Shown piece after piece: positions 9,981 through 44,063 of a stretch of DNA of 64,000 nt. Each line of letters opens with the position of its first letter. Position 1 is the first letter of the stretch. The notes under the pieces are model-generated. The model was not told the origin of the DNA. It made no database searches and saw only the letters and a list, made by a program, of their open reading frames with translations. A program made the translations under genes and the position numbers. The stretch lies in the IMG/VR virus record IMGVR_UViG_3300021197_001489, positions 186,001 to 250,000 of that record, one strand, 5' to 3'.

Positions 9981-10073
9981 GTGTATGTTAGGCTATACAC
10001 AGATGCGTAGTAGCGCATCACAGGCAAATGATAGAGTAGTAGTTGCTACTCGTAGGCACATAGGAGAAATAAA
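9981..10073 (+). promoter_or_regulatory. Structured gp32 5' leader: three tandem hairpins and AGGCA repeats (putative translational operator)
   Basis: Hairpins 9981-10000 (loop TTAGGC), 10002-10019 (loop TAGTAG), 10034-10051 (loop TAGTTG); SD AGGAG. Confidence 0.65.
10022..10063 (+). repeat. 42-bp element, copy 1 (perfect inverted copy at 44022-44063)
   Basis: AGGCAAATGATAGAGTAGTAGTTGCTACTCGTAGGCACATAG is identical to the reverse complement of 44022-44063. Confidence 0.97.
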
Positions 10074-11060
10074 ATGGCTTCATTAGCAGAAATCCGCGCA
10101 CGCCTTGCAGCGGCAGATAACAGACAAGGCAATCAGTCATCCGGTGGTGATGGCGCAATTTATCCACATTGGAATATGAACGAAGGCGATAGTGCAGTGC
10201 TACGCTTCCTTCCTGATCTGGATACAACTAATACGTTCTTCTGGATTGAACGTGCAATGATTAAACTTCCTTTCAATGGCATTAAAGGGCAAATGGATAG
10301 CAAAAGCATCCAGGTGCAAATTCCTTGTATTGAGATGTGGGGCGAGACTTGTCCAATCCTCACAGAAGTACGCACATGGTTTAAGGACAAAAGTCTTGAA
10401 GATATGGGTCGCAAGTATTGGAAAAAGCGTTCATATATCATGCAAGGTTTTGTGCGCGAAAACCCAATTGCTGATGACAAAAGCGAAAAAGCGATCCGAC
10501 GCTTTATTATTGGTCCTCAGATTTTCCAGACTATCAAGTCAGCATTGATGGACCCAGAGTTGGAAGAACTTCCAACTGATTACGAGCGTGGTTTAGACTT
10601 TCGCGTAAGTAAAACACAAAAAGGTGGATACGCTGACTATTCCACAAGCAAGTGGGCTCGCAAAGAGACTCCACTTACTGCACAGGAAGCAGAAGCAATT
10701 GAATCACAAGGTTTGTATAACCTAGGTGATTTCTTGCCAAAGCGTCCAAGCGAAGAAGATCTCCGTGTAATGAAAGAGATGTTTGAAGCAAGCGTTGACG
10801 GACAAAGCTATGACGCAGAGCGTTGGTCTAACTACTTCCGTCCAGCGGGTATGCAGAAGCCTGAAGGTTCCTCCGGCTCAGCACCAGCACCACAGGCAGC
10901 ACCTGCACCAGCAGCACCCGCAGTAAAAGAAGATGTTCCTTTTGAAGTTGCACCAGCAACGCCAACTGCTCCAGTTGAAGCACCTGCTCCAGCAGCAGAT
11001 AGCAGCAACAAAGCAGAAGACATACTTGCTATGATTCGTAGCAGACAGTCTGCATCTTAA
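10074..11060 (+). CDS. gp32: Single-stranded DNA-binding protein (T4 gp32-like)
   Basis: AVLRFLP, C...CPI, YWKKRSY, G.DF...K...GGYADYSTSKW; Pro/Ala linker; adjacent to uvsX. Confidence 0.9.
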   Translation: MASLAEIRARLAAADNRQGNQSSGGDGAIYPHWNMNEGDSAVLRFLPDLDTTNTFFWIERAMIKLPFNGIKGQMDSKSIQVQIPCIEMWGETCPILTEVRTWFKDKSLEDMGRKYWKKRSYIMQGFVRENPIADDKSEKAIRRFIIGPQIFQTIKSALMDPELEELPTDYERGLDFRVSKTQKGGYADYSTSKWARKETPLTAQEAEAIESQGLYNLGDFLPKRPSEEDLRVMKEMFEASVDGQSYDAERWSNYFRPAGMQKPEGSSGSAPAPQAAPAPAAPAVKEDVPFEVAPATPTAPVEAPAPAADSSNKAEDILAMIRSRQSAS

Positions 11061-11067
11061 CTAGCAG

Positions 11068-11106
11068 TGAGGGCAGGGCTTTATTCCCTTTTTCTCCCTG
11101 CCCTCA
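11068..11106 (+). other. Intergenic 11-bp hairpin with a 17-nt pyrimidine-rich loop (terminator, processing or stability element)
   Basis: TGAGGGCAGGG / CCCTGCCCTCA; only a weak U tail. Confidence 0.6.
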
Positions 11107-11143: not shown

Positions 11144-12250
11144 GTGGCAAAACCATTTGACGTAAGCAAGTTCCGCAAGGACATTACTAAAAGCATTGAC
11201 GGACTCAGTATTGGGTTCAATGATCCTACAGACTGGATCAGCACAGGCAACTATGCACTTAACTATCTTATCTCGGGAGATTTCCACAAAGGTTGTCCAC
11301 TAGGTAAAGTTACAGTGTTTGCTGGAGAATCAGGTGCAGGCAAAAGTTACTTTGCCGCAGGTAACATTGTTAAACATGCCCAAGAGCAAGGCATCTTTGT
11401 TGTGCTTATCGACACTGAGAACGCACTTGATGAAGCATGGTTAACTGCACTTGGTGTAGATACTGATGAAAGCAAACTGCTTAAACTGGCAATGAGCATG
11501 ATCGACGATGTTGCTAAAACAATTAGCACGTTTATGAAAGACTACAAAGCAATGGCCGACGGCGAACGTCCTAAGGTGTTGTTTGTAATTGATTCGTTAG
11601 GCATGATGCTTACTCCAACAGATGTTAATCAGTTTGAATCAGGTGACATGAAAGGTGATTTGGGCAGAAAGCCTAAAGCACTAACAGCATTGGTGCGTAA
11701 TACTGTAAACATGTTTGGCAGTTACAACGTTGGTATGGTGTGTACCAACCACACATATGCATCACAAGATATGTTTGATCCAGATGATAAGATCTCGGGT
11801 GGACAAGGCTTTATCTATGCAAGTTCAATCGTGGTTGCAATGCGCAAGCTCAAGCTCAAAGAGGATGAAGATGGCAACAAGATTTCGCAAGTAAAAGGTA
11901 TTCGTGCAGCATGTAAAGTTATGAAAACACGCTATGCTAAACCGTTTGAAAGTGTACAAGTTAAGATTCCTTATGAAACTGGCATGAACCCATATAGTGG
12001 GCTTGTTGATCTTGCCGAAAGTGTAGACTTGCTTAAAAAGTCTGGCAACAGACTGAGCTTTATTAAATCTGATGGCAGCGAAATTATCCAGTTCCGCAAA
12101 GCATGGGAACGCAATGAAAATGGCTGCCTTGACGAATTGATGCTAGAGTTTGCTAAAATTGGTGACGAAACGGTAAGTATAGACGAAGTTGTTGATGTGC
12201 ATGAAGTCATTGATGCCGAGACAGGCGAAATATTACAAGAGAATGCATAA
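11144..12250 (+). CDS. uvsX: RecA-like recombinase UvsX
   Basis: ISTGNYALN, Walker A GESGAGKS, IDTENA, VIDSLG, SGGQG. Confidence 0.95.
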   Translation: MAKPFDVSKFRKDITKSIDGLSIGFNDPTDWISTGNYALNYLISGDFHKGCPLGKVTVFAGESGAGKSYFAAGNIVKHAQEQGIFVVLIDTENALDEAWLTALGVDTDESKLLKLAMSMIDDVAKTISTFMKDYKAMADGERPKVLFVIDSLGMMLTPTDVNQFESGDMKGDLGRKPKALTALVRNTVNMFGSYNVGMVCTNHTYASQDMFDPDDKISGGQGFIYASSIVVAMRKLKLKEDEDGNKISQVKGIRAACKVMKTRYAKPFESVQVKIPYETGMNPYSGLVDLAESVDLLKKSGNRLSFIKSDGSEIIQFRKAWERNENGCLDELMLEFAKIGDETVSIDEVVDVHEVIDAETGEILQENA

Positions 12251-13469
12251 TAATAAAGACACATTCTGTGTTGCTCCGTGGTTTCAAGTAAGAAACAATA
12301 ATGACATGGCTAAAAGAGTTTGTTGTTCAATGTCTCATGAAATAACTGAACACATGCCTAGTCAAAACATGAGTTCATTGGAGTATTTAAATTCTCAACC
12401 AATACGAGATTTGAAAAAAGATTTGGCCAACGGAGTAAGATCAAAGCATTGTCGACTCTGTTGGATGCAAGAAGAAAATGGAATACAGAGTTTGCGACAA
12501 CATCTAAATTCATTGATATCAATGCAACAAGATATCAACAAACCAAATTGGATAGATGTGTACTTTAGCAAGAAAGACGACTTTGACAGTGATATGATTG
12601 TGTCTGCAGATATCAAAGTTGGTAATACTTGTAACTATGCCTGTGTGATGTGTGTTCCTGAAGATAGTTCGTTGATTTATGCAAATTGGATGGCTAGTAT
12701 CGATCACCCAGTTGTACAGCGCAAACTAGCAAAGGATCCTGAATACTTAACAAGGGCCAAGTCATTTACATTTAAGAATAAACAGTATATTGAGTACTTG
12801 GATGACATTCTGGAAAACAACAAGCATATCAAATTTTTGAAGTTCCTTGGCGGAGAGCCGTTTTTAGATAAGTTCTTGATAGATAAATTACGCCAGTTGC
12901 CCAACAGTACCAAAAGTAAACTGAGTTTGCTGTTTGTTACCAATGCTAGTAAGGATTTTTCAGCAATAATTGATTCGCTTGGAGACTTTAAGTACATTCA
13001 ATGCAGTGTTAGTCTTGAAGGAATAGGAGAAGTCCAGGAATGGGCAAGGTACGGAAGTAATTGGCAAGAGGTTGAGCAGCACGTTATCAAAGCTGTTGAT
13101 AACCCTCGAATAGATATGGCAGTATTGTATACACTTCAAACAGCAACAGTCCTAGGGTTTAGAGATCTTGCAACCTGGTGTAGAAACAATAACATTAAAT
13201 TGAAAACTAACATAGTAGACAATCCTGTATGCCTAGGCATGAAAACACTGCCTGATCATATGAAGAAAAATTTGCTAAAGGATATAGAGATTAATCGTAA
13301 CATCATAGATAACACTGAAACTACATACGAAGACTTATTGGTAGGAGTCAATGATTCAAAGTTTGATCTATCCTTGCGTGACGATTTCTTTGAGTACATT
13401 GAATGGTACGAAACTAACAAAAATATTAAAAAATTAAAAAATATTTTTCCAGAACTGTTTGTAGAATAG
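12243..13469 (+). CDS. Radical SAM protein with N-terminal twitch/SPASM-like Cys domain
   Basis: FCVAPW..CC..C..CW; CNYACVMC; GGEPF; TNAS; SLEG..EWARYG; start moved to ATG 12243. Confidence 0.85.
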   Translation: MHNNKDTFCVAPWFQVRNNNDMAKRVCCSMSHEITEHMPSQNMSSLEYLNSQPIRDLKKDLANGVRSKHCRLCWMQEENGIQSLRQHLNSLISMQQDINKPNWIDVYFSKKDDFDSDMIVSADIKVGNTCNYACVMCVPEDSSLIYANWMASIDHPVVQRKLAKDPEYLTRAKSFTFKNKQYIEYLDDILENNKHIKFLKFLGGEPFLDKFLIDKLRQLPNSTKSKLSLLFVTNASKDFSAIIDSLGDFKYIQCSVSLEGIGEVQEWARYGSNWQEVEQHVIKAVDNPRIDMAVLYTLQTATVLGFRDLATWCRNNNIKLKTNIVDNPVCLGMKTLPDHMKKNLLKDIEINRNIIDNTETTYEDLLVGVNDSKFDLSLRDDFFEYIEWYETNKNIKKLKNIFPELFVE

Positions 13470-13764: not shown

Positions 13765-14217
13765 ATGTGGTATAGCAAAGTAACAAACAATCTTGGCAAC
13801 ATTCCTGGCTTTATCACGCACTTTGAAGCAGAACTTGAAGTTGCTAAAAGTGAGTGTCAGGTTGGAGGACTCATTGAAAAAAATATCAAGGCTTTGCCGG
13901 GTGTAACGGAGCATCGTTTCAATCAACTGCAAGAGATTGAAGCAGTGCTTAACTTCTTAAACATACAGTTACGCAAGATTAGACGCCGGCATTTCCAAAA
14001 GTATTTGGAAGGATATGCCAGAGCGTTAACAAGTCGTGATGCAGAAAAGTATGTAGACGGCGAAGATGAAGTCATTGACTTTGAAACACTGATCAACGAA
14101 GTTGCATTATTGCGCAACAAATATTTGGGCATCATGAAAGGCTTGGATACAAAGCAGTGGCAAATGGGCCACATTGTGCGATTGCGCACAGCAGGCATGG
14201 AAGATGTGCAAGTCTAA
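13765..14217 (+). CDS. uvsY: Recombination mediator UvsY-like
   Basis: Helical protein with AEKYVDGEDE and KGLDTKQWQMGHIVRLR; near uvsX. Confidence 0.75.
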   Translation: MWYSKVTNNLGNIPGFITHFEAELEVAKSECQVGGLIEKNIKALPGVTEHRFNQLQEIEAVLNFLNIQLRKIRRRHFQKYLEGYARALTSRDAEKYVDGEDEVIDFETLINEVALLRNKYLGIMKGLDTKQWQMGHIVRLRTAGMEDVQV

Positions 14218-26126: not shown

Positions 26127-26154
26127 AAAAAGCACCCAATAGGGTGCTTTTTTT
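26127..26154 (+). terminator. Rho-independent terminator
   Basis: AAAAAGCACCC-AATA-GGGTGCTTTTTTT. Confidence 0.9.
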
Positions 26155-26174
26155 GTGGCCAAACTGTAGAAAAC

Positions 26175-26204
26175 GGTTGACCTTTTATCTATATGTGTTA
26201 TACT
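26175..26204 (+). promoter_or_regulatory. Early sigma70-type promoter 1
   Basis: GGTTGACCTTTT; TTGACC 26177-82, 16 nt, TATACT 26199-26204. Confidence 0.75.
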
Positions 26205-26233
26205 GTATGTACAGTTAGAAAAAAGGAGCAGAC

Positions 26234-26539
26234 ATGCGCTACGCAGATACACCAGAACTTCAAGCCGCAATTGATACAATTCGTGCTATTAAAACCCAAG
26301 CAGATCTCAATGTACTTGCTGATGTATGGAAACAGCAGATGACTTTTATTGGGCGTCAAGCAAGTTCAGGACTGGCTAAAGGCGACACAATCACTTGGGA
26401 ATATGGCGGCATTGTTAAGCAAGGTATCATTACAAAAATGAACCGCAAAACTGTTGAAGTTGTTAACGCAGGTGCAACTCCATTTGGCGCAACTCGCACT
26501 AAGATCCATAACAGCATGATTACTGGAAAAATTTCTTAA
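26234..26539 (+). CDS. Early hypothetical protein (SH3-like C-terminus)
   Basis: AGGAG RBS; KGDTITW..G.ITKMNRKTVEV. Confidence 0.7.
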   Translation: MRYADTPELQAAIDTIRAIKTQADLNVLADVWKQQMTFIGRQASSGLAKGDTITWEYGGIVKQGIITKMNRKTVEVVNAGATPFGATRTKIHNSMITGKIS

Positions 26540-26555
26540 AAAAGTTGCATTTAGA

Positions 26556-26586
26556 GGTTGACCTTTTTGTAAATATCGGTTATACT
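26556..26586 (+). promoter_or_regulatory. Early sigma70-type promoter 2
   Basis: GGTTGACCTTTT; TTGACC 26558-63, 17 nt, TATACT 26581-86. Confidence 0.8.
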
Positions 26587-28243: not shown

Positions 28244-28277
28244 AGTGGGCAGTTGAAACATACTGCCCACTCTTTTT
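28244..28277 (+). terminator. Rho-independent terminator
   Basis: AGTGGGCAGT-N8-ACTGCCCACT-CTTTTT. Confidence 0.85.
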
Positions 28278-28294
28278 ACAAGATAAGTATTTGT

Positions 28295-29455
28295 ATGCCA
28301 TACTGTCATTCCCCATGGACAAACTTAGATATTGACCCCCAAGGCTATATGTCGCCTTGCTGTAAATTTGACTACAGTAAATATGATGATAGTCCTCTCA
28401 ATATCAAGGACAACAGCATCAATGACTATCTTAACAGCAATGTTGTGCTACAAGCCAAGGAAGATTTTGAAAACAATCGCTGGCCTGCTGGCTGCATACG
28501 CTGTAAAATAGAAGAAGAAAGCAATGTGCAAAGCAAGCGCCAACTGGATTATGAACGCTGGCAAGACCAATATAACAATTATGCAAAAGAGCAGAAACTT
28601 ATTACTGCGAGTATTGCTTTTGGTAACACTTGTAATTTAAAATGCATTACATGCGGCCCAGGTTCAAGCAGTAAGTGGTACAACGAGTCACAAGCAATAA
28701 ACAAAAAAACTCCAGAAGTAAAGCATTTTTATGCCAATAACAAAGCAAATCATTTTTATAAACAAAACTTTGTAGAAAACTTTTTAGCACAGACACCTAA
28801 TTTAAGTCATCTTGACATACCAGGTGGGGAACCGTTCTTGAGCGGTGTAAAGCAACAAAAAGATCTATTAGGCTGGTATATAAAAAACAATCAGGCAAAA
28901 GACATTAGTATTCATTACACAACCAATGCACAGTTATATCCAGATGATGAATGGTGGAATCTATGGCAGCATTTCAAAGAAATTGACATACAACTTAGTA
29001 TTGACGGTATTGATGCAAGGTACGAATATATCAGATTTCCTGGAAACTGGAATAAATTTATTGAAAACTGTAAACAATTCCAAACAGCCGAAAAGTCAAA
29101 TAAAAATATCAGGCTTAGTTTAAGTCATACGTTAAGTGCCTATAATATTTACTATCTTGATGAATTCTTTACATGGTGTGAATCTATGCATTTGCCAAGA
29201 CCGTGGGTTGGCAGGGTTCAAAACCCTCCGCACATGAGGGTTAGTGTTTTTCCAACTGATATAAAGAATCTGATTGTTAGCCACTTGTCTACTTCTCAAT
29301 TCGATGACGTAAAAACTTGGGCAAAACATCTCAATGAGACTGATGATAGTACATATTACAAAGACTTTCTCACACGTTTAGAAGCACATGATGAATATCG
29401 TAGTATCTCTTTTCAAAATACGTTTCCTGAATTAGCCAAAATACTTGCTAATTAA
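28295..29455 (+). CDS. Radical SAM protein with twitch/SPASM-like N-terminal domain
   Basis: YCHSPW..PCC..C.RC; CNLKCITC; GGEPF; YTTN; SIDG..EYIR; TAAGTA-N5-ATG. Confidence 0.87.
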   Translation: MPYCHSPWTNLDIDPQGYMSPCCKFDYSKYDDSPLNIKDNSINDYLNSNVVLQAKEDFENNRWPAGCIRCKIEEESNVQSKRQLDYERWQDQYNNYAKEQKLITASIAFGNTCNLKCITCGPGSSSKWYNESQAINKKTPEVKHFYANNKANHFYKQNFVENFLAQTPNLSHLDIPGGEPFLSGVKQQKDLLGWYIKNNQAKDISIHYTTNAQLYPDDEWWNLWQHFKEIDIQLSIDGIDARYEYIRFPGNWNKFIENCKQFQTAEKSNKNIRLSLSHTLSAYNIYYLDEFFTWCESMHLPRPWVGRVQNPPHMRVSVFPTDIKNLIVSHLSTSQFDDVKTWAKHLNETDDSTYYKDFLTRLEAHDEYRSISFQNTFPELAKILAN

Positions 29456-34961: not shown

Positions 34962-35186
34962 ATGGGATTGACAAGACCTAAAGTATCACAAGTTGAAAAA
35001 AAGCCCAAAAGCCAAGATGGACATTTTTGGGTAAGCATGGTAAAGAGTGTACTGCGACTGATTGGATGCTATGCACTGTGGACTGCCGCAACCGTAATTG
35101 GTGGTGTAGTAGCCGTTCCGCTAGTACTAGCAGCAGGGTTGTTTGCAGCCGCCGAAGTGCTAGGCATTGTTGAAGAATTGGTATGA
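34962..35186 (+). CDS. Small membrane protein
   Basis: AAGGAG RBS; two hydrophobic segments; AEVLGIVEELV end. Confidence 0.7.
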   Translation: MGLTRPKVSQVEKKPKSQDGHFWVSMVKSVLRLIGCYALWTAATVIGGVVAVPLVLAAGLFAAAEVLGIVEELV

Positions 35187-35743
35187 GTGCTGACGTAGAC
35201 ATTGACTTTGCTGACAGACAGCAAATAATTGACTTGATTCGGTGTACACCTGCACGACAAAATGCAGATGGCCGCAAGCATAACAGTGGTGTCTACGTTA
35301 CTCCAATTCCACGAGATGCACAACATGATTGTGCTAGCATAACATACGAAGAAGCAGAAGATCGAGGATACTTCAAACTGGACTTGCTCAATATGAGTGT
35401 GTACAGTTTGATTCGTAACCAAGCACACTATGACAGTTTGCTAGCACAAGAACCACAGTGGCAGCTGATGTGGGAGCAACCAGGAATTGTTGAACAATTG
35501 GTACATGTGGGCAACTATGCACAACTGCTAAAAGAAATGCAACCAGACAGCATACAACGTATGGCTGCATTTATATCAATTATTCGTCCAGGAAAAGCAC
35601 ATCTAAAGAACAAGCCCTGGGACGAAGTGTTTGCCAGTGTGTGGGATGGTGATAGCACAGATGGATTTGTGTTTAAGAAAAGTCATGCAATTAGCTATGC
35701 AACGCTAGTAGCATTGCATCTCAACTTATTAACGGAAATATAA
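35183..35743 (+). CDS. Miniature family-C (DnaE-like) DNA polymerase core, 186 aa
   Basis: DVDIDF, KHNSGVY, GYFKLDLL, IIRPG, FKKSHAISY. Confidence 0.8.
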   Translation: MSADVDIDFADRQQIIDLIRCTPARQNADGRKHNSGVYVTPIPRDAQHDCASITYEEAEDRGYFKLDLLNMSVYSLIRNQAHYDSLLAQEPQWQLMWEQPGIVEQLVHVGNYAQLLKEMQPDSIQRMAAFISIIRPGKAHLKNKPWDEVFASVWDGDSTDGFVFKKSHAISYATLVALHLNLLTEI

Positions 35744-37858: not shown

Positions 37859-38602
37859 GTGTCAATCAAACGTGTTATAGCATTTGGCGATAGTTGGACA
37901 TATGGCGACGAGCTTGTTGATCCTGCGCTGCGCCACTTAGACGAAGACCAATTCCGAGATCATTATGACAGTAACAAACCATGGCGTCTGGCTAACTGCT
38001 ATGCTGGACTTGTTGCTGATCATTATGGCGTTGAACTAGACAACATGGCTTTTCCTGGCAGCAGTCTTGAAAGCATGCGCTGGACATTGCAATGGTTAAT
38101 CAAACACAGTGGGCAAGATTTGCAGGATGCATTGTTGCTTGTGGGACTAACTGATAGTAGCAGACAAAGTTGGTTTAATCCTTTACACGAATCCAGCATG
38201 AAAGATCCACCTTGGAACAGACACATGCACGGAACGTGGCTTACACAACCCAATTCAGATATAAATGATAACTGGTTTAAATTGCAAAAATTATGGTTAG
38301 GCATGAGTTATCACAAAGAGTGGAGCGAGTTCAACTTTCAACAAACAATTAATCTGTTTGATTATGCTTCAATGACCACTGGCGCTACTGTAATACAATT
38401 CAGTGTTCTTGAAAATAATTGGACAGCTAATGTACCAACACTGCTTTATCCAGGCATGAACTGGCGCACTATATTGCAGCAAAAAAAGATGTCTGAAGGT
38501 ATACAACCTTTTGCTTCGGGCGGCCACCCCAATGAAAAAGGACATGAAATTATATCAAAACACTTGATTGAACACATAAAGCATGCTAAAATAATAGCAT
38601 AA
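37859..38602 (+). CDS. SGNH/GDSL hydrolase-like protein
   Basis: AFGDSWT, A.PGSS, VGLT..SR, GHPNEKGH. Confidence 0.7.
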   Translation: MSIKRVIAFGDSWTYGDELVDPALRHLDEDQFRDHYDSNKPWRLANCYAGLVADHYGVELDNMAFPGSSLESMRWTLQWLIKHSGQDLQDALLLVGLTDSSRQSWFNPLHESSMKDPPWNRHMHGTWLTQPNSDINDNWFKLQKLWLGMSYHKEWSEFNFQQTINLFDYASMTTGATVIQFSVLENNWTANVPTLLYPGMNWRTILQQKKMSEGIQPFASGGHPNEKGHEIISKHLIEHIKHAKIIA

Positions 38603-39579
38603 TGATAGATGTTCTAAGTTACTTGCCTAATGAGCGTAAAGCTACAGTATCTGGCTGGGTCAGTTTCAATGGGCCTTGCTGTGTTCACAACGGCGAAAGT
38701 CAGGACAAACGCAAACGTGGTGGCATACGCCAACAAGATGATGAGTGGAGTTATCACTGTTTTAACTGTGGCTTCACTGCTAGTTTTACACCCGGGCGTC
38801 CAGTAAGCTACAAAGCAAGACGGCTACTTGAATGGTTAGGCGTTGACAGTGTAGACATTGAACGTCTTAACTTAGAAAGTCTCAAGCGTAAAAGTTTGCT
38901 GGATTTAACCACTGAACGCAACCAGATACGTCATGTAGATATCAGTTTTAACGAAACTGAAGTACCCGAAGGTGTGGAACTGATTGATCCTGAACTAGAG
39001 CAGCATCAACGCTATGTTGAGTACCTGGCAAACAGGGGCATAGTGTTAGAGTATCCATTTCTAGTTGATCGCAAACGTAAACCGCGTGATAGGATTGTGG
39101 TTCCGTTTACATACAAGAACAGAATTGTAGGACATACATCACGCTACTTGGACAATCGCATGCCCAAGTTTATCAACAGTCAGCAGCAGGGTTATGTGTT
39201 TGGTTATGATTTACAAAAGCCACATTGGACAAGTGCTATTGTTACAGAAGGCATATTTGATGCACTCAGTATCAGTGGTTTGGCTGTTATGCATGACACT
39301 ATCAGCCCACAGCAAGCACAGTTACTAAAACAATTAAAGCGCAAGATCATTGTTGTGCCAGATCAGGACAAGGCCGGGTTGAGTATTATAGACGCAGCAA
39401 TTGAAAATCGTTTTGCAGTAAGCATACCAGAATGGCCCAATGCTGTTAAAGATGTTAACGATGCTGTGGTAAAATATGGTGTTGCAAGTACAATGTTGCA
39501 GATACACAACAACGCAGAAACAAGCAAGATCAAAATTGAAATGTATAAGAAACGTCTGCAAAGGAAACTAAGTGAGTAG
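38602..39579 (+). CDS. DNA primase (zinc ribbon + TOPRIM)
   Basis: PCC..YHCFNCG; VTEGIFDA; PDQDKAG; KDVND. Confidence 0.9.
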   Translation: MIDVLSYLPNERKATVSGWVSFNGPCCVHNGESQDKRKRGGIRQQDDEWSYHCFNCGFTASFTPGRPVSYKARRLLEWLGVDSVDIERLNLESLKRKSLLDLTTERNQIRHVDISFNETEVPEGVELIDPELEQHQRYVEYLANRGIVLEYPFLVDRKRKPRDRIVVPFTYKNRIVGHTSRYLDNRMPKFINSQQQGYVFGYDLQKPHWTSAIVTEGIFDALSISGLAVMHDTISPQQAQLLKQLKRKIIVVPDQDKAGLSIIDAAIENRFAVSIPEWPNAVKDVNDAVVKYGVASTMLQIHNNAETSKIKIEMYKKRLQRKLSE

Positions 39580-40261
39580 ACTTTACATATTTGGAGATAG
39601 CTACAGCACACCATACTACTGTGTTGAACCGCAGCAAAGTTGGTGGGGGCTTATAGCGAAACAACTTGGTCTTCCGGTAAGCAACTACAGCTGGCCAGGC
39701 AACAACATTGACAGTATACAGCACATTATTGTTAGCAACCAAGATCAGTTTAACAAAGATGATTTTGTTATAATTGGAATACCACCTGTAGAAAGACAAA
39801 CCATATTTAAAAAAGACGCTGCTCCAAAATCTGTAACACATTTCAATAAAGACGTAGTACAAACACACATATCTGATGTATTAAGCCACCAGGGATTAGA
39901 TCAGTGTACCATGCACGAGATGGGCAAAGACATTGTTAATGTATACAATGTTAGTTGGCAAGAAGCCAAAATACTTAAAGATATAATTATGTTGAGTCAC
40001 TGGCTTGATTCAGTTGTGGACAAACATCTTATAGTGAATCTAAGTGTACCGTTTCAACAGCCCACTGAGTGGCCTACACTTAAACATTTACAAGATCAAG
40101 CACGGAAAAATAAAAACATAAAAGTGTTTGCTGACACTTACTACAGTGTTAACCACTCAGTGAACAAACCAGTAGATTATGATACACACGGTTGGTTTGG
40201 ACATCATGGTGCTGAAGGAAACGCATTATGGTATAACAGTGTACTTAGGACAATGATATGA
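39572..40261 (+). CDS. SGNH/GDSL hydrolase-like protein
   Basis: IFGDSYS, PGNN, ER, GHHG..GN. Confidence 0.6.
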   Translation: MSRLYIFGDSYSTPYYCVEPQQSWWGLIAKQLGLPVSNYSWPGNNIDSIQHIIVSNQDQFNKDDFVIIGIPPVERQTIFKKDAAPKSVTHFNKDVVQTHISDVLSHQGLDQCTMHEMGKDIVNVYNVSWQEAKILKDIIMLSHWLDSVVDKHLIVNLSVPFQQPTEWPTLKHLQDQARKNKNIKVFADTYYSVNHSVNKPVDYDTHGWFGHHGAEGNALWYNSVLRTMI

Positions 40262-40911
40262 GATTTTATTTTAATGGATGTAGTATTACCCAAGGCGCTG
40301 GCTTTGCTAACGAAAAGTTAAATCCAAACATTTATCCTAACTTGATTGCAACTGATTATATCAATGATGCATCAGGCGGAGCAAGCAATTTAAAGATATT
40401 TTTACATTCAAGTAGAGCAATTATTGACAACTTGGCTGATATTTATATTGTGCAATGGAGCGCATTGCACCGTCATTGGGTTTATGCAGCACCAGATCAA
40501 GGTACCTATATAGGATCAGTGGCAGATTCACATCAATTAAAAGACTTTGTTGCTCAATATCAGTTGCTCAATCACGATTATGGTAATATACTACAACTAA
40601 TAGATTTTTGTCGTATTCTTCAGGCCTTGGCAAACAGTTGTAATGCCAAGTTGTTGTTTGTTAATGGACTTGTTGATTGGAGTAACAAAATTGATTGGAT
40701 GCACAAACTAGTAGAGGATGCTAGCAGTGATCATGAAAGATTTGTTGAAAACTTGCAAAACAATATGGAATTGGTAGATTGGAACTTGTGGATAAATCCC
40801 TGGAGCAGCATGTATGACAGTAGACTTGATGAAGCTAACGATGGATTACATCCAGGGCCGTTAACACATAAACACATAGCCGACCAAATAAGGGATAAAT
40901 TAATAGCATGA
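40258..40911 (+). CDS. SGNH/GDSL hydrolase-like protein
   Basis: NGCSIT, GGASN, VQWS..R, DGLHPG...H..IA. Confidence 0.7.
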   Translation: MRFYFNGCSITQGAGFANEKLNPNIYPNLIATDYINDASGGASNLKIFLHSSRAIIDNLADIYIVQWSALHRHWVYAAPDQGTYIGSVADSHQLKDFVAQYQLLNHDYGNILQLIDFCRILQALANSCNAKLLFVNGLVDWSNKIDWMHKLVEDASSDHERFVENLQNNMELVDWNLWINPWSSMYDSRLDEANDGLHPGPLTHKHIADQIRDKLIA

Positions 40912-42314
40912 CTGATTACACATATGACGTACAAAAATTATTCCTAGAGATGATAATGCAAGATGCAGAAAGCTATCTGCGTGTGCAAAATATTTTCAAT
41001 GTGGAAAACTTTGACAGAGACTTACGCGATGCAGCCGAGCTTATTTACAACCACGCTGACCAACACAAAACACTTCCAGAACGCTCGCAGCTAAAAGCAG
41101 TAACAGGTACTGACTTGCTGGAGATTCCAGATCTCAATGAGGGCCACACTGATTGGTTTTTGGGAGAGTTTGAAGCATTTACTAGGCGCAGTGAACTAGA
41201 ACGAGCTATCTTAAAAAGTGCAGACTTGCTAGAAAAAGGCGAGTATGACCCAGTTGAAAAGCTAATCAAGGACGCAGTGCAAATAAGTTTAACAAAAGAC
41301 TTGGGCACAGATTATTTTGAAGATCCGAGAGCAAGACTTGCAGCACTCAAAGACAATAACGGACAGAACAGTACTGGCTGGAACAACTTAGACAAGTTGT
41401 TGTATGGCGGATTTAACAGAGGCGAACTACAGATATTTGCTGGCGGCTCTGGATCGGGTAAAAGTTTGTTTATGCAAAACCTAGCAGTGAACTGGATGGA
41501 AGCTGGACTAAGCGGAGTTTACATTACACTTGAATTAAGTGAAGGTTTGACTGCTATGCGTATTGATAGTATGTTGACAAATACGCCAAGTAAACAGCTA
41601 TTCAAAGATCTAGATACTGTTGAAATGAAAGTAAAGATGATGGGCAAGAAAGCAGGAGGTCTGCAAATAAAGTACATGCCTGCACAAAGCAACGTCAATG
41701 ACATAAGAGCATTTGTAAAAGAACTAAGCATCAAACAAGGCAAAAGCATAGACTTTATGTGCATTGACTACTTGGATTTGCTTATGCCAGTAAGTGCTAA
41801 GGTATCGCCAAATGATCTGTTTGTGAAAGACAAGTATGTATCAGAAGAACTGCGTAACTTGGCAAGAGAACTTAACATACTGTTTGTTACAGCATCTCAG
41901 CTGAACAGAGGTGCTGTAGAAGAAGTAGAGTTTGATCACAGTCATATATCTGGTGGTATTAGCAAGATCAATACTGCTGACAATGTGTTTGGTATCTTTA
42001 CAAGCAGAGCAATGCGTGAAAGAGGACGTTATCAACTACAGCTAATGAAGACCAGAAGTTCAAGCGGTGTTGGAATGAAAGTTGATTTGGAGTTTGATGC
42101 TGAAAGTTTGCGTATACGTGACTTAGGAGATGATGAAGAGTATCAACAGTTTAAGAAACAATCAAGTTCGATTTATGATCAAATAAAAGCAAAGTCGCTT
42201 GTAACAGACAGCGAAACAGAAGCAACTGTGGCGGATGAGCCTGGCAAGATTGTTGCTGACGTACAAAGCACAAAACTTAAACAGATGTTAGCTGGCATTA
42301 AGCAAAAAGGTTAA
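40908..42314 (+). CDS. gp41: Replicative DnaB-like helicase (T4 gp41-like)
   Basis: STGW..LD, GGSGSGKS, YITLE, IDYLDL, TASQLNR, MKTR. Confidence 0.93.
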   Translation: MTDYTYDVQKLFLEMIMQDAESYLRVQNIFNVENFDRDLRDAAELIYNHADQHKTLPERSQLKAVTGTDLLEIPDLNEGHTDWFLGEFEAFTRRSELERAILKSADLLEKGEYDPVEKLIKDAVQISLTKDLGTDYFEDPRARLAALKDNNGQNSTGWNNLDKLLYGGFNRGELQIFAGGSGSGKSLFMQNLAVNWMEAGLSGVYITLELSEGLTAMRIDSMLTNTPSKQLFKDLDTVEMKVKMMGKKAGGLQIKYMPAQSNVNDIRAFVKELSIKQGKSIDFMCIDYLDLLMPVSAKVSPNDLFVKDKYVSEELRNLARELNILFVTASQLNRGAVEEVEFDHSHISGGISKINTADNVFGIFTSRAMRERGRYQLQLMKTRSSSGVGMKVDLEFDAESLRIRDLGDDEEYQQFKKQSSSIYDQIKAKSLVTDSETEATVADEPGKIVADVQSTKLKQMLAGIKQKG

Positions 42315-44005
42315 GCATACTGATCAATAGGCATTGCTTTTACGTTCTTGCGTTTTACTTTTAAAAAGTTGCTGTTGTCTTTGGTCCACATTTGTCCTTC
42401 GCCAACTATAACACTGTTACGAGCATACTTCACAGGACGGTCGACCACAAGATCAACATAACGCCCTTCGCCAACACCCAGTGTTATAAAATGTATGTAA
42501 TTTTTACTATCGCTTTTAAACACTCTACTGTTTGCTACTATTCCGGCAAACTGAAACTTGTCTAAAAACAAGTTTTGCAATCCCATGTTTGGCAAAAAGC
42601 CAGGGCTGTTCCATGCACCGTGCTCTTTGAAACTCTCAACAGGATCTTCTGTGATCCAGTTGTCAAAGCCTAAGTCACGTAGATCCCAGCCAGCACGTTT
42701 TGCTTCGTTGCGATATACCCAACGTGCATATGATCCTTGACAGTGCTTCAAGCAAGCACGCCAAAATTCTTTTGGATTGTGTACTTTATGATATGCCAAC
42801 GCCCATATAAGTCTACCCAAGTTAACTGCGTGTGCTCGGCACAAGCCAAATCCACTTAGGCTTTGCATTTGTTCGTAGATGTCATGCTTGTCTGGATGAT
42901 CACCTAGTTTTGCCATAAACTGCATCATCTTTTCTTCGTTCTTTTTGGCAAATGCTCGTCTGTACATGTCCGCTTCATAGGGATTGATGCCAATCAGTTT
43001 CATTATTTTGTGTATGGCATCGTCTTCATATACTATGGCATTCTTTTGTATGCCTTTTTCACTCCAGTCACGGAACCAACTGGCCTTGCGTCTACCTTCC
43101 ATAGCAACAGGACGTACCAAAGCACTAGCAAACACACAGTCTTCGACTCCTGTTGGCTGCAACGCTCGGAACAGTCTTTTCATGGTCGGCGATTCACCTT
43201 GTGTGACACCAAGTACATCGCCTCTGCACAACAAGTCACTGACTGCTTCATCTTGTTTTGGATATGAGTCTAGTCTTGTGTGAGGATCTATTTCTAATAG
43301 CTGTGATAATCCTCTGTTGGCCAGTATATCTACTTTCAAATGTTCCAGGTCTTCAACTTCGTTTTTGTCTAACAGTATGAGATTGTCGTCACGGAATAGA
43401 CTTTTGGGTAATGCTCTGTCAAACACAAGCACACCCCCACAGTGCTTGCTTATGCAACGTTTCTTGCCCATTAATTTGCGTTCAATGCGTTTTGCTTCTT
43501 TTTCGTCGACACCCAGTTTTGCATAATCTATGTCTTTTGGCAATCTGCCTTTTGCACCTAGACGTTTTGCTGCTTCGCGTTTTGCACTCTTTTCTCTGTA
43601 AAGCACATAGTTTGATATCCTGGCACTCTGTGTTGGCCATTTATCAAATACACGTTGCATTGCAAGTTCTTGTTTGTGATGCGGTATATCAATATCCACA
43701 TCAGGCAAGTCGTCTCTGTGTGGGTTTAAGAAACGTGCCAGTGGTATGTTCCACTCAATCGGATCAACATCAGTTATGCCCATGAGGTAGCAAACCAAAC
43801 TGCTACCAGCACTGCCGCGTGTCATGTGTGGTATGTCACTGTTGAGATCAAGTATAAGTCTTATTTTGAGAAAGTAATCTGTAAAACGCTGCTGAAGTAT
43901 AATTTCAAATTCTTCTGCTAGTCTATCTTGATATTCGTTGCCTACAGGAGTAGGTCTTCTAAATTGTTCTAATAATAATTCTATTTGCTCTAGTTCTGTT
44001 TTCAT
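42311..44005 (-). CDS. dnaE: PHP-less family-C DNA polymerase (DnaE-like), 564 aa
   Basis: RGSAGSSLVCYLMGITDVDP, PDVDID, KHCGG, KVDIL, QGES, ALVRP, GLCRAHA, C-terminal OB-like strands. Confidence 0.9.
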   Translation of the reverse strand: MKTELEQIELLLEQFRRPTPVGNEYQDRLAEEFEIILQQRFTDYFLKIRLILDLNSDIPHMTRGSAGSSLVCYLMGITDVDPIEWNIPLARFLNPHRDDLPDVDIDIPHHKQELAMQRVFDKWPTQSARISNYVLYREKSAKREAAKRLGAKGRLPKDIDYAKLGVDEKEAKRIERKLMGKKRCISKHCGGVLVFDRALPKSLFRDDNLILLDKNEVEDLEHLKVDILANRGLSQLLEIDPHTRLDSYPKQDEAVSDLLCRGDVLGVTQGESPTMKRLFRALQPTGVEDCVFASALVRPVAMEGRRKASWFRDWSEKGIQKNAIVYEDDAIHKIMKLIGINPYEADMYRRAFAKKNEEKMMQFMAKLGDHPDKHDIYEQMQSLSGFGLCRAHAVNLGRLIWALAYHKVHNPKEFWRACLKHCQGSYARWVYRNEAKRAGWDLRDLGFDNWITEDPVESFKEHGAWNSPGFLPNMGLQNLFLDKFQFAGIVANSRVFKSDSKNYIHFITLGVGEGRYVDLVVDRPVKYARNSVIVGEGQMWTKDNSNFLKVKRKNVKAMPIDQYA

Positions 44006-44021
44006 TTATTTGCCTGTTTTT

Positions 44022-44063
44022 CTATGTGCCTACGAGTAGCAACTACTACTCTATCATTTGCCT
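44022..44063 (-). repeat. 42-bp element, copy 2, in the dnaE 5' leader
   Basis: Identical in sense to gp32 leader 10022-10063; ends 16 nt before the dnaE ATG. Confidence 0.97.

What the first reader, a model, noticed from the sequence alone, without database searches (positions are those of the whole stretch)
10022..44063. A 42-bp piece of the gp32 (SSB) leader is copied exactly in front of a PHP-less DnaE: candidate ssDNA-sensing 'phage SOS' polymerase switch
Seen in sequence: AGGCAAATGATAGAGTAGTAGTTGCTACTCGTAGGCACATAG occurs at 10022-10063 (+), ending 10 nt before the gp32 ATG. It occurs again at 44063-44022 (-), ending 16 nt before the ATG of the 564-aa DnaE. The match is 42/42, the copies are 34 kb apart, and both are in the sense orientation of their gene. 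The element is a hairpin (GAGTAG-TAGTTG-CTACTC) flanked by two AGGCA motifs. The dnaE leader adds a third AGGCAAAT where an SD would normally be. It is the only long repeat I noticed in the window. Established: T4 gp32 represses its own translation by binding its structured mRNA leader and is released when ssDNA titrates it. The DnaE here lacks the PHP domain, so it has no built-in proofreading site. Inference: the polymerase gene has captured the SSB translational operator, so it is made only when ssDNA gaps or stalled forks accumulate. That would be a LexA-free damage-inducible (translesion or mutator) circuit run by the phage SSB.
Basis: partly seen in the sequence, partly recalled or inferred. 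Interest (0 to 1): 0.92.

Follow-up and report, generated by a model that had tools for sequence, protein, structure and literature searches.

The report
SSB and DnaE share leader operator
In an abundant uncultured 316-kb jumbo phage, the genes for the gp32-type single-strand-DNA-binding protein and for a truncated (PHP-less) Pol III-type polymerase carry the same short repeated motif in their mRNA leaders, and in this one lineage also the same hairpin; this suggests that one factor, possibly the SSB itself, tunes both, which would extend T4's classic gene 32 autoregulation.

Summary
A 42/42-nt element (47 nt at 96%) sits in sense orientation 10 nt before the SSB ATG and 16 nt before the dnaE ATG. 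It is the longest repeat in the window. At dnaE it appears in 13 independent assemblies, so it is not an artefact.

The exact copy is young and directional. The hairpin module occurs 61 times in IMG/VR: 58 in SSB leaders (SSB identity 69-100%) and 3 in dnaE leaders, all from the 100%-identical DnaE lineage. Relatives with 93-97% identical DnaE lack it.

The older shared feature is a tandem array of AGGCA pentamers in G-depleted spacers. It is found in about 45 distinct dnaE leaders and about 60 distinct SSB leaders across the clade, and at almost no other gene start.

SSB leaders also carry hairpins with an invariant G-U[AGUU]G-C top and covarying stems. This architecture (folded element, repeated short motif, RBS) parallels the T4 gene 32 translational operator. 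The SSB model matches only T4/RB69 gp32.

A shared post-transcriptional operator is therefore well supported. That the SSB is the repressor rests on analogy only. The "phage SOS / translesion polymerase" reading has no direct support. I class this as a new variant of a known kind.

The parts
9946..9974 (+). sigma-70-like promoter of the SSB gene (TTGACG-17-TATACT). A T4-late-like TAAATA box lies in its spacer at 9955-9960.
   Evidence: 10/12 match. The same promoter arrangement recurs in about 60 related SSB leaders. TAAATA boxes precede many genes in the window.
9981..10000 (+). 5'-proximal hairpin 1 of the predicted SSB leader (GTGTATG...TATACAC).
   Evidence: MFE fold of 9981-10110. Analogous 5' hairpins are seen in related leaders. 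The transcription start is inferred, not mapped.
10002..10019 (+). Hairpin 2 of the SSB leader (GATGCG-TAGTAG-CGCATC). It belongs to the conserved-loop hairpin family; most relatives have loop TAGTTG.
   Evidence: Alignment A2: 100% of cells paired, 5 of 7 pairs with compensatory changes.
10022..10063 (+). Repeat copy A: the native copy in the SSB leader. Layout: AGGCA (10022-10026), spacer, hairpin 3 GAGTAG-TAGTTG-CTACTC (10034-10051), GT, AGGCA (10054-10058), CATAG.
   Evidence: The module is present in 58 SSB leaders of IMG/VR with SSB identity 69-100%.
10062..10066 (+). Shine-Dalgarno AGGAG of the SSB gene, 3 nt after the last AGGCA.
   Evidence: Read from the sequence. An SD is present in most related SSB leaders.
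10074..11060 (+). gp32-fold single-strand-DNA-binding protein (328 aa).
   Evidence: phrog_1192, 6.6e-66. Pfam gp32, 2.3e-05, below the cut-off. The AF2 model matches only T4/RB69 gp32 (E 2e-07 to 7e-06, TM 0.57-0.65).
11144..12250 (+). UvsX-like recombinase, immediately downstream of the SSB gene. No AGGCA array in its leader.
44073..44078 (-). TAAATA box (T4-late-like promoter element), 9 nt upstream of the first AGGCA of the dnaE leader.
   Evidence: The box and its spacing are conserved in dnaE leaders across the clade. The same box precedes virion genes in the window. Promoter function is inferred.
44022..44063 (-). Repeat copy B: the recently acquired copy in the dnaE leader. Layout: AGGCA (44063-44059), hairpin (44051-44034), AGGCA (44031-44027).
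   Evidence: Found only in the 100%-identity DnaE lineage (3 IMG/VR and 10 ENA contigs). Relatives have a 5-nt spacer in its place.
44011..44015 (-). Third AGGCA of the dnaE leader, 5 nt before the ATG. There is no canonical SD.
   Evidence: In 45 distinct dnaE leaders the last AGGCA starts 7-12 nt before the ATG (16 nt in one). In a divergent lineage it abuts or overlaps the ATG.
42311..44005 (-). PHP-less C-family polymerase (DnaE-like, 564 aa). It is a single-gene unit on the minus strand, convergent with dnaB.
   Evidence: Pfam PF07733 and PF17657 only. Aligns from residue ~320 of solved DnaE structures. PDVDID and KVDIL carboxylates are intact. More than 1,391 homologs of comparable architecture; all 120 listed are 564-570 aa.
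40908..42314 (+). DnaB-like replicative helicase, convergent neighbour of dnaE. No array.
38602..39579 (+). DnaG-type primase (replication module). No array.
35183..35743 (+). 186-aa piece of the 'split minimal Pol III alpha' typical of group 2.2 jumbo phages. It is a second, separate C-family element.
   Evidence: phrog_11778, 3.7e-56. Present in 96 PA5oct/RaK2-type phage records. Literature: PMC7824862.
54430..54693 (+). Homolog of the small tail-anchored membrane protein that carries a 4-5-unit AGGCA array in a sister clade. Here it has a TAAATA box but no array.
   Evidence: (alignment A1).

Best explanation
The SSB and dnaE mRNA leaders share a post-transcriptional operator.

Shown:
- Both leaders carry tandem AGGCA pentamers in unstructured, G-poor RNA next to or overlapping the ribosome-binding region.
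- The SSB leader also has one or two hairpins with an invariant G-U[AGUU]G-C top.
- In the window's lineage one such hairpin, with its flanking AGGCAs, was recently copied from the SSB leader into the dnaE leader. The likely route is recombination or templated repair between the pre-existing AGGCA motifs.

Inferred:
- A single RNA-binding repressor occupies the arrays and blocks 30S binding.
- The repressor is most likely the gp32-fold SSB itself, nucleating at the hairpin and spreading cooperatively over the AGGCA region, as T4 gp32 does on its pseudoknot plus UUAAA repeats.
- When ssDNA titrates the SSB, both mRNAs would be derepressed. SSB supply and synthesis of the PHP-less polymerase would then follow ssDNA load.
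- The newly acquired hairpin would give the dnaE mRNA of this lineage a nucleation site, and so tighter coupling.
For: (1) Specificity. In the 64-kb window, leader-type arrays occur only at SSB and dnaE. The same holds in 90 kb of the source genome. In 976 kb of related loci, nearly all of the 103 tight arrays followed by a gene start precede dnaE or SSB, and the remainder lie inside coding sequence. Of 907 distinct ORF starts, 68 have an array.

(2) Depth. Arrays are present in 42 of 45 distinct dnaE leaders (DnaE identity down to 77%), in a further DnaE lineage with an unalignable N-terminus, and in 57 of 62 distinct SSB leaders. AGGCA is invariant while the spacers and the unit number (2-4) vary.

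(3) Same-genome pairs. Three contigs carry both genes, and all three have arrays at both.

(4) RNA-level signature.
- Arrays are always on the sense strand, between promoter and ATG.
- Spacer G is 1.1% (dnaE) and 6.9% (SSB), against 20% in ordinary leaders, while C is unchanged.
- Spacings in SSB leaders run continuously from 9 to 54 nt.
- The hairpins covary: 100% paired, 5 of 7 pairs compensatory, score 0.874 vs 0.205 in shuffles (0/500), slid controls <=0.2.
- 48 of 51 TAGTTG occurrences in SSB leaders are closed by >=6 bp.

(5) Occlusion geometry. The last AGGCA lies 3 nt before the SD of the SSB gene. In dnaE it takes the SD position, and in one lineage it abuts or overlaps the ATG.

(6) Precedent.
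- The T4 gene 32 operator is a folded 5' element plus more than 40 nt of unstructured RNA with UUAAA/UAAA repeats plus the RBS.
- M13 gp5 (an SSB) represses the mRNA of another replication gene (PMC535899).
- The SSB here has the gp32 fold.
- Cultured relatives have their own leader repeats, for example Atu_ph07 with a hairpin plus 4x CACAA at a 9-10-nt period before the SD.

(7) Direction and age of the copy.
Against: - There is no experimental or transcript data. Transcription starts are inferred.
- Nothing identifies the trans-factor.
- T4 gp32 is not known to read a specific pentamer. Its site size (~7 nt, from prior knowledge) does not match the dominant 10-nt period.
- 10 nt is one DNA helical turn, and in dnaE the array starts right after the TAAATA box. 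A DNA operator is therefore not excluded.
- Most dnaE leaders lack any folded nucleation element, which in T4 is essential for repression.
- Some SSB lineages lack the inter-AGGCA hairpin.
- A sister clade has the array in front of a small membrane protein with no evident link to ssDNA.
- Cultured relatives (PA5oct, RaK2) lack AGGCA, and the syntenic PA5oct-like region has no dnaE.
Confidence: 0.45

Rival explanations
1. The cis-element is the same, but the trans-factor is different. A dedicated phage translational repressor (RegA-like), or the polymerase itself (as T4 gp43 binds a conserved-loop hairpin in its own leader), recognises AGGCA and/or the U-AGUU-G hairpin and regulates a small, clade-variable set of mRNAs.
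For: - T4 RegA represses about 30 functionally diverse mRNAs at sites on or just 5' of the AUG. RB69 RegA SELEX yields triplet repeats. The gp43 operator is a hairpin with a conserved loop (PMC3014915).
- The sequence-specific pentamer and the invariant loop point to a sequence-reading protein.
- The third target in the sister clade is a membrane protein.
Against: - No RegA, CsrA, Hfq or other RNA-binding domain was found in the window ORFs tested. Only 20% of the genome was seen.
- The arrays are best developed and most elaborate in the SSB leader, the classic site of SSB autoregulation.
- Cultured gp32-type SSB genes each have their own leader repeats.
Confidence: 0.2
2. The arrays act on DNA. 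Tandem AGGCA boxes, one helical turn apart and just downstream of the promoter, would be operators for a phage transcription regulator (repressor roadblock or activator) that co-regulates the two genes.
For: - 47 of 65 spacings in dnaE leaders are exactly 10 bp.
- The first box lies 5-10 bp after the TAAATA box.
- The hairpin insertion changes the spacing from 10 to 32 bp, about three helical turns.
- Both leaders lie in divergent intergenic regions.
Against: - The strand-specific G depletion of the spacers has no rationale on duplex DNA.
- Spacings in SSB leaders are continuous from 9 to 54 nt rather than multiples of 10.5.
- In the SSB gene the arrays lie 45-100 nt downstream of the promoter and next to the SD.
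- The interspersed hairpins covary as RNA stems.
- All arrays are in sense orientation, and some overlap the start codon.
Confidence: 0.12
3. There is no repressor. The G-poor, A/C-rich AGGCA array is a positive element: an SD-independent translational enhancer or ribosome standby site with weak AGG anti-SD contacts, or an mRNA-stability element. The hairpins would protect the mRNA or mark processing sites.
For: - dnaE lacks a canonical SD, whereas 35 of 62 window genes have one. The AGG of the last unit often sits at a workable SD distance.
- SSB must be made in large amounts.
- Unstructured CA-rich leaders are known enhancers (prior knowledge).
Against: - In one DnaE lineage the last unit abuts or overlaps the ATG, and the previous one is about 15 nt away. 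Neither spacing suits an SD.
- The strict invariance of all five bases, including C and A, exceeds what weak anti-SD pairing needs.
- The element is restricted to 2-3 gene families rather than highly expressed genes in general. Virion genes lack it.
Confidence: 0.13
4. This concerns the 42-nt copy only and is compatible with any of the above. The exact repeat is a selectively neutral by-product of ectopic recombination between two AGGCA-bearing leaders. It adds nothing functional to dnaE regulation.
For: - It is confined to one near-clonal population.
- The junctions fall on pre-existing AGGCA and AGGCAcat microhomology.
- dnaE leaders function without a hairpin in every other lineage.
Against: - The transferred piece is a complete unit of a covarying, conserved-loop hairpin family.
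- It is fixed in every contig of that population, across 10 samples and two haplotypes.
Confidence: 0.35

Closest known systems
T4 / RB69 gene 32 autogenous translational operator (gp32 binds its own mRNA leader; relieved by ssDNA)
   Same: - The SSB has the gp32 fold.
- The long leader has a folded 5' element, followed by unstructured RNA with several copies of a short motif that run into the RBS (PMC535899).
- The motif differs between lineages, as between T4 and RB69.
   Different: - The folded element is a simple hairpin, or two, with an invariant U-AGUU-G top, not a pseudoknot.
- The repeat is AGGCA, not UUAAA/UAAA.
- The same repeat is also present in the leader of a second gene (dnaE). 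This is not known for T4 gp32, which regulates only itself.
- Binding by the SSB is untested.
Ff (M13/f1) gene V protein repression of gene II mRNA
   Same: A phage SSB translationally represses the mRNA of a different replication protein, linking that protein's synthesis to free SSB (PMC535899).
   Different: - The SSB family is unrelated (gp5 is a small dimeric OB protein).
- The target is a nickase, not a polymerase.
- The operator has no AGGCA array or hairpin.
- It belongs to a ssDNA filamentous phage, not a dsDNA jumbo phage.
T4 gp43 (DNA polymerase) autogenous operator
   Same: - A polymerase gene under translational control.
- The operator includes a hairpin whose upper part and loop are conserved while the lower stem varies, plus sequence overlapping the RBS (PMC3014915).
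   Different: - gp43 is a family-B polymerase that binds its own mRNA.
- Here the conserved-loop hairpin is native to the SSB leader and reached the polymerase leader only recently.
- The polymerase is C-family.
T4 RegA translational regulon
   Same: One small repressor acts on many mRNAs at unstructured sites on or next to the AUG. RB69 RegA selects short repeated triplets. This would explain the third target in the sister clade.
   Different: - No RegA homolog was detected in the ORFs tested.
- RegA does not regulate gene 32 or gene 43.
- RegA sites are A/U-rich, not AGGCA.
Bacterial SOS-controlled error-prone DnaE2/ImuA'-ImuB mutasome
   Same: - A C-family polymerase that is additional to the main replicase and lacks functional PHP proofreading.
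- The best NCBIfam hit, though sub-threshold, is the DnaE2 model.
   Different: - There is no LexA box.
- No imuA/imuB-like partner was recognised among the annotated window ORFs.
- DnaE2 retains a (degenerate) PHP domain and C-terminal domains, whereas this protein has neither N-terminal PHP nor recognisable C-terminal OB/tau regions.
- Damage induction is purely hypothetical.
Split minimal Pol III alpha of group 2.2 jumbo phages (Iyer et al. 2021, PMC7824862)
   Same: It belongs to the same phage supergroup. One piece is present in the window (35183-35743). Both lack the PHP domain.
   Different: The 564-aa DnaE is a single polypeptide with clear similarity to cellular DnaE palm and fingers (E about 1e-29 to solved structures). 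It is absent from the syntenic position in PA5oct-like phages. It is therefore a further, clade-specific polymerase gene.

Membership tests
gp32-family phage SSB | OB-fold core superimposable on T4/RB69 gp32 | tested here: met
   The AF2 model (core pLDDT 73-89) has only six significant PDB matches, and all are T4 or RB69 gp32 (E 2.4e-07 to 6.5e-06, prob 1.00, TMt 0.57-0.65). The next hit is at E 0.14.
gp32-family phage SSB | Sequence-profile membership (Pfam PF08804 gp32) | tested here: inconclusive
   24.9 bits against a cut-off of 26.8, E 2.3e-05. phrog_1192 'single strand DNA binding protein' scores 6.6e-66. phmmer against PDB finds nothing.
gp32-family phage SSB | T4-like recombination/replication context (UvsX, UvsY, DnaB, primase) | tested here: met
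   UvsX is the next gene. UvsY-like is at 13765-14217. Primase and DnaB are present in the window.
gene 32-type translational operator | Lies in the 5' leader of the SSB gene and reaches the ribosome-binding site | tested here: met
   The last AGGCA ends 3 nt before the AGGAG SD. The layout is similar in about 60 related leaders.
gene 32-type translational operator | Folded 5' nucleation element (a pseudoknot in T4) | tested here: inconclusive
   Hairpins with an invariant top and covarying stems are present. No complementary partner for the hairpin loop, as a pseudoknot would need, was seen on reading the leader; no pseudoknot prediction was run. Some SSB lineages and nearly all dnaE leaders lack the hairpin.
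gene 32-type translational operator | Adjacent unstructured region with several copies of a short motif | tested here: met
   There are 2-4 AGGCA units, and spacers have 1-7% G against 20% background. In the dnaE leader fold, mean P(unpaired) of the AGGCA units is 0.64-0.73.
gene 32-type translational operator | SSB binds the RNA and represses translation; ssDNA relieves it | not testable with these tools
   Needs EMSA or toeprinting and reporter assays.
C-family replicative polymerase (DnaE) | Pol-beta-like palm with the three catalytic carboxylates, plus the fingers domain | tested here: met
   PF07733, 2.6e-41. PF17657, 1.1e-16. PDVDID and KVDIL motifs present. Matches DnaE structures at E 4e-29.
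C-family replicative polymerase (DnaE) | N-terminal PHP domain | tested here: not met
   The alignment starts at residue ~320 of E. coli and M. tuberculosis DnaE, and only 17 residues precede the palm. The same holds in all 120 listed family members.
C-family replicative polymerase (DnaE) | C-terminal clamp-binding, OB and tau-binding regions | tested here: inconclusive
   No Pfam domain was found in residues 368-564. Alignments to solved DnaE structures end near residue 418. No structure was predicted for this part.
Error-prone DnaE2/ImuC | Profile membership, imuA/imuB partner genes and LexA control | tested here: not met
   NF004225 scores 177.9 bits against a cut-off of 939, only marginally above the DnaE1 models at 151-165 bits. 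The neighbours are DnaB and an unknown HxD protein, and no imuB/Y-family gene was recognised among the annotated window ORFs. LexA control is not testable.
RegA-type regulon | A RegA homolog encoded by the phage | tested here: inconclusive
   None was found among about 60 window ORFs scanned with Pfam or PHROGs. About 70% of the genome was not examined.
Group 2.2 jumbo phages (RaK2 / PA5oct / Atu_ph07 type) | gp32-type SSB, UvsX, T4-type terminase, split minimal Pol III alpha; family-B primary replicase | tested here: inconclusive
   The first four features are met, and synteny with phage Paride is clear. No family-B polymerase was seen in the 90 kb of the source genome examined. Its presence is expected from PMC7824862 only.

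The most novel reading that the evidence does not exclude
A gp32-type SSB acts as the hub of a small translational regulon in an abundant clade of aquatic jumbo phages. Free SSB represses its own mRNA, the mRNA of an accessory proofreading-less C-family polymerase and, in a sister clade, the mRNA of a small membrane protein, all through AGGCA arrays. Accumulating ssDNA (gaps, stalled forks, recombination intermediates) would then switch on an extra polymerase without LexA. The window's lineage would show such a regulon being tightened, through transfer of the hairpin nucleation module.
Probability: 0.15. Interest if true: 0.85.

Novelty: new variant of a known kind. Interest (0 to 1): 0.6.

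Why it matters
Translational autoregulation by T4 gp32 is a textbook circuit, but it is known only as self-regulation. The one case of an SSB controlling another replication gene is in filamentous ssDNA phages.

A conserved operator motif shared by the SSB gene and a polymerase gene would show that SSB-type (or RegA-type) control can be extended to a polymerase in large dsDNA phages. The motif is seen in hundreds of environmental genomes.

It would also give a first functional handle on the widespread PHP-less ~565-aa DnaE of jumbo phages, whose role is unknown (replicase partner, gap filler or repair enzyme).

The recent hairpin transfer is a natural experiment in how cis-regulatory modules move between leaders.

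The system can be tested with synthetic genes and RNAs, without culturing the phage. Atu_ph07, which is culturable, has an analogous leader and may offer an in vivo model.

Tried and rejected
1. Nucleotide searches of both loci against 50,697 deposited phages found nothing. Relatives were reachable only through proteins.

2. Mis-assembly was rejected.

3. Rfam has no family anywhere in the window.

4. I looked for a separately encoded PHP domain or a second full polymerase in the window. None was found. The search turned up only the 186-aa split Pol III alpha piece.

5. I looked for a family-B polymerase in the source genome.
- The Paride 'DNA polymerase exonuclease subunit' probe found no IMG/VR relatives. 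That protein is DnaQ-like.
- Two large unannotated proteins next to the ligase are not recognisable polymerases.
- Walking to 177-267 kb of the contig found none.
- The question remains unresolved.

An exact-pattern scan solved this.

7. A true co-variation test needs a different motif at both genes in a more distant genome, and this was not possible. All array-bearing dnaE leaders recovered use AGGCA, although 3 of 45 distinct leaders hold only a single unit. The one deposited distant homolog (LR756508.1) has no array, and its SSB was not found.

8. The hypothesis that the two divergently transcribed neighbour genes are dedicated regulators was rejected. They are paralogs, but close relatives have a different gene beside dnaE.

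It shows that further targets exist. It is not a complete census.

10. The second BLAST 'place' of the Atu_ph07 leader repeat was not located. It may be a shifted self-match.

Full report
OBSERVATION

The 42-mer AGGCAAATGATAGAGTAGTAGTTGCTACTCGTAGGCACATAG occurs exactly twice, at 10022-10063 (+) and 44022-44063 (-). There are no mismatches, and none of 100 dinucleotide-preserving shuffles gives a match. The repeat finder extends it to 47 nt at 96%. It is by far the longest repeat in the window: the next are 29 nt at 76% and 37 nt at 81%.

Copy A ends 10 nt before the ATG of a 328-aa ORF (10074-11060). Copy B ends 16 nt before the ATG of a 564-aa ORF on the minus strand (42311-44005). Both copies are in the sense orientation of their gene.

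THE GENES AND THE GENOME

The 328-aa protein matches PHROG 1192, 'single strand DNA binding protein' (6.6e-66). It matches Pfam gp32 just under the cut-off. An AlphaFold model built on 37 homologs has only six significant PDB matches, and all are T4 or RB69 gp32 (E 2e-07 to 7e-06, TM 0.57-0.65). It is a gp32-fold SSB. A UvsX-like recombinase follows it, and a UvsY-like protein lies nearby.

The 564-aa protein has only the Pol III alpha palm (PF07733) and fingers (PF17657) domains. It aligns from residue ~320 of solved DnaE structures (E 4e-29) and keeps the catalytic carboxylates. The PHP domain is therefore absent. The protein is a single-gene minus-strand unit, convergent with a DnaB helicase and close to a DnaG-type primase.

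The window is positions ~186-250 kb of a 316-kb contig:
- IMG/VR UViG 3300021197_001489
- also NCBI GCA_900491975.1, record UEXM01000006.1

By SSB similarity and gene order it belongs with the PA5oct/RaK2/Atu_ph07 jumbo phages. These form 'group 2.2' of Iyer et al. That group is described as using a family-B replicase, phage sigma factors and a split minimal Pol III alpha (PMC7824862). One piece of that split enzyme is in the window (35183-35743).

The 564-aa DnaE is an additional gene. It is absent from the syntenic position in PA5oct-like phages. It is very common in environmental data: more than 1,391 homologs, and all 120 listed are 564-570 aa with the same two domains. I could not verify a family-B polymerase in this genome. 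None lies in the 90 kb examined.

THE EXACT COPY IS REAL, RECENT AND DIRECTIONAL

In 72 related dnaE loci, only the three with 100% identical DnaE have the hairpin. Relatives with 93-97% identical DnaE read TAAATAtacctattaAGGCAtctttAGGCAaacatAGGCAaacATG instead.

A scan of IMG/VR for the 25-nt hairpin module found 61 occurrences:
- 58 in SSB leaders, with SSB identity 69-100%
- 3 in dnaE leaders, all from the 100% lineage

The 328-kb relative (contig 3300021964_000012) has the module in its SSB leader but not in its dnaE leader. Ten further contigs from ten ENA samples, made with several assemblers, all carry the hairpin-bearing dnaE leader in two one-SNP haplotypes.

So the module is native to the SSB leader. 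It was copied into the dnaE leader of one population and is fixed there. The junctions fall on AGGCA (left) and AGGCAcat (right), which dnaE leaders already had. In effect a 27-nt hairpin-bearing spacer replaced a 5-nt spacer, which fits ectopic recombination or templated repair at microhomology.

THE OLDER LINK: AGGCA ARRAYS

The conserved feature is a tandem array of AGGCA.

In 45 distinct dnaE leaders:
- 42 have 2-4 units.
- Start-to-start spacing is 10 nt in 47 cases and 12 nt in 13.
- The last unit starts 7-12 nt before the ATG (16 nt in one leader).

A more divergent DnaE lineage (N-terminus MKKDKELND...) has TAAATA-N10-AGGCAx3, with the last unit abutting or overlapping the ATG.

In 62 distinct SSB leaders, 57 have 2-4 units. 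They often flank a hairpin and end just before a canonical SD.

The array is specific to these genes:
- In the window and in 90 kb of the source genome, only these two leaders have it.
- In 976 kb of related loci, nearly all of the 103 tight arrays followed by a gene start belong to dnaE or SSB. The others are chance hits inside coding sequence.
- Of 907 distinct ORF starts, 68 have an array.
- Three contigs that hold both genes have arrays at both.

A truncated IMG/VR scan for three units at 10-nt spacing also revealed a third target in a sister clade. This is a ~99-aa tail-anchored membrane protein preceded by ATAAATA and 4-5 units. Its homolog in the window (54430-54693) lacks the array.

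RNA OR DNA?

Several features point to single-stranded RNA:
- Every array is on the sense strand, between promoter and start codon.
- Spacers are almost free of G (1.1% in dnaE, 6.9% in SSB, against 20% in ordinary leaders), while C is normal.
- Spacings in SSB leaders run continuously from 9 to 54 nt.

The SSB leaders of this sub-clade also carry one or two hairpins with an invariant G-U[AGUU]G-C top and at least six different stems. On an alignment of 13 distinct instances:
- 100% of cells pair.
- 5 of 7 pairs show compensatory double changes.
- The covariation score is 0.874, against 0.205 in shuffles (0 of 500 reach it) and <=0.2 for slid partners.

Ascertainment is not the cause. Of 51 TAGTTG occurrences in 96 distinct SSB leaders, 48 are closed by >=6 bp. 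Other SSB lineages have different hairpins at the same place, and some have none.

Against this, the 10-nt period in dnaE leaders equals one helical turn, and the array begins right after the TAAATA box. A DNA operator cannot be excluded.

PROMOTERS

The SSB gene has a good sigma-70-type promoter (TTGACG-17-TATACT) with a TAAATA box in its spacer. dnaE has only a TAAATA box, 9 nt before the first AGGCA. TAAATA boxes resemble the T4 late promoter core. They precede many genes here, including virion genes, which fits the phage sigma factors described for group 2. These are consensus matches. No transcription start is mapped.

MECHANISM

The T4 gene 32 operator consists of three parts: a folded 5' element that nucleates gp32, more than 40 nt of unstructured RNA with several UUAAA/UAAA repeats, and the RBS. 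Both the fold and the repeats are essential, and ssDNA titrates gp32 away (PMC535899). M13 gp5, another SSB, represses the mRNA of a different replication gene (same paper).

The SSB leaders here have the same three-part architecture with a different fold and a different repeat. Cultured relatives have their own repeats. Atu_ph07 has a hairpin plus 4x CACAA at a 9-10-nt period before the SD, and a Vibrio phage has ACGGTACAA x2.

My best explanation (confidence 0.45) is a shared translational operator bound by the SSB. The dnaE mRNA would normally carry the repeat part only, and in the window's lineage it has now also gained a nucleation hairpin.

The step 'shared cis-element acting on RNA' is well supported. 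The steps 'repressor', 'the SSB is that repressor' and 'ssDNA relieves it' are inference by analogy.

Rival explanations:
- A dedicated RegA-like repressor, or the polymerase itself (0.2). The membrane-protein target in the sister clade and the strict pentamer favour a sequence-reading factor. No RegA/CsrA/Hfq-like domain was found in the ORFs tested.
- A DNA-level operator (0.12).
- A repressor-independent translational enhancer or stability element (0.13).
- Separately, the 42-nt copy itself may be neutral (0.35).

THE 'PHAGE SOS / TRANSLESION' READING

No result supports it directly.
- The DnaE is catalytically intact and PHP-less.
- Its best NCBIfam hit is the DnaE2 'error-prone' model, but at 178 bits against a cut-off of 939, and only marginally above the DnaE1 models.
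- No imuA/imuB-like gene was recognised among the annotated window ORFs.
- An accessory role is plausible, because the phage group is reported to replicate with a family-B enzyme and because a 316-kb genome is unlikely to rely on a polymerase without proofreading. Both points are inference.

VERDICT

This is a new variant of a known kind (gp32-type or RegA-type translational control, here shared between an SSB gene and a C-family polymerase gene). It is testable with synthetic components. Interest 0.6.

Noticed in passing
window 9392-9895 (-) and 44133-44756 (+): The two genes transcribed divergently from the SSB and dnaE leaders are paralogs (BLASTP 3e-08, 35% over 62 aa). They share a W.D..G....H.D motif that suggests a cupin or 2OG-Fe(II) oxygenase. 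Neither has a Pfam, PHROG or NCBIfam hit. Close relatives have a different gene beside dnaE, so the pairing is not conserved.
   Followed up: partly
L181, L183, L187, L198, L214 (sister-clade contigs); window homolog 54430-54693: A ~99-aa tail-anchored membrane protein gene is preceded by ATAAATA and 4-5 AGGCA units, and the ATG overlaps one unit (AGGCATG). The window's homolog (87 aa) starts 20 codons later and has no array (alignment A1).
   Followed up: partly
window 35183-35743 (+); Paride OR805295.1 58804-59313 and 50373-51146: The 186-aa protein is the fingers-side piece of the 'split minimal Pol III alpha' of group 2.2 jumbo phages. In phage Paride the N-terminal piece (169 aa, PF07733 positions 21-94) and a DnaQ/RNase T-type exonuclease annotated 'DNA polymerase exonuclease subunit' lie tens of kb away.
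   Followed up: partly
window, many intergenic regions (e.g. before 3331, 6930, 36855, 47157, 53290, 54430, 57263): TAAATA / ATAAATA boxes 15-40 nt upstream of start codons, including virion genes. They resemble the T4 late promoter core (TATAAATA). Two such boxes face each other 20 nt apart in the dnaE/44133 divergent region.
   Followed up: partly
window 26150-27390: Three near-identical sigma-70-type promoters (GGTTGACCTTTT-N-TATACT/TATAAT) with strong SDs stand in front of three small consecutive genes (26234, 26617, 27383). They are probably an early gene cluster. The third gene is an AAA+/clamp-loader-like protein ([D10], 30, 32, 35).
   Followed up: no
window 37859-38602, 39572-40261, 40258-40911: Three weak GDSL-lipase/acylhydrolase-like paralogs are interleaved with the primase and DnaB genes. 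This is unusual content for a replication module.
   Followed up: no
window 12189-13469 and 28253-29455: Two radical-SAM-like proteins. The surrounding block 13.5-25.5 kb holds several methyltransferases, a cupin, a glycosyltransferase and a heptose-phosphate kinase/adenylyltransferase-like gene. It may be a DNA or sugar modification cluster inserted between UvsX/UvsY and the helicase.
   Followed up: no
window 58819-58864: The leader of the 144-aa gene before the ribonucleotide reductase operon reads TAAATAttcacttgaacatttAGGCAtctaaacttatATG. It has a single AGGCA 11 nt before the ATG and another 30 nt upstream of it. This may be chance.
   Followed up: no
L163 (Atu_ph07 NC_042013.1, 76700-76790) and L164 (Vibrio phage 2.275.O): Cultured relatives have their own short direct repeats in the SSB leader. 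Atu_ph07 has a hairpin GTAGA/TCTAC followed by 4x CACAA(T/C) at a 9-10-nt period before the SD. The Vibrio phage has ACGGTACAA x2 and CTACTTAAA x2. BLAST reports a second 'place' for the Atu_ph07 segment in its genome, which I did not locate.
   Followed up: partly
window 3895-4461 (-): An HNH endonuclease gene (Pfam HNH in the gene table) sits on the opposite strand just upstream of the large terminase gene. This is a typical homing-endonuclease position.
   Followed up: no
L166 (LR756508.1 47361-49085): A 484-kb uncultured phage encodes a 574-aa PHP-less DnaE that is 37.5% identical to the window's. The short architecture therefore extends beyond this clade. Its leader has no AGGCA array.
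   Followed up: partly
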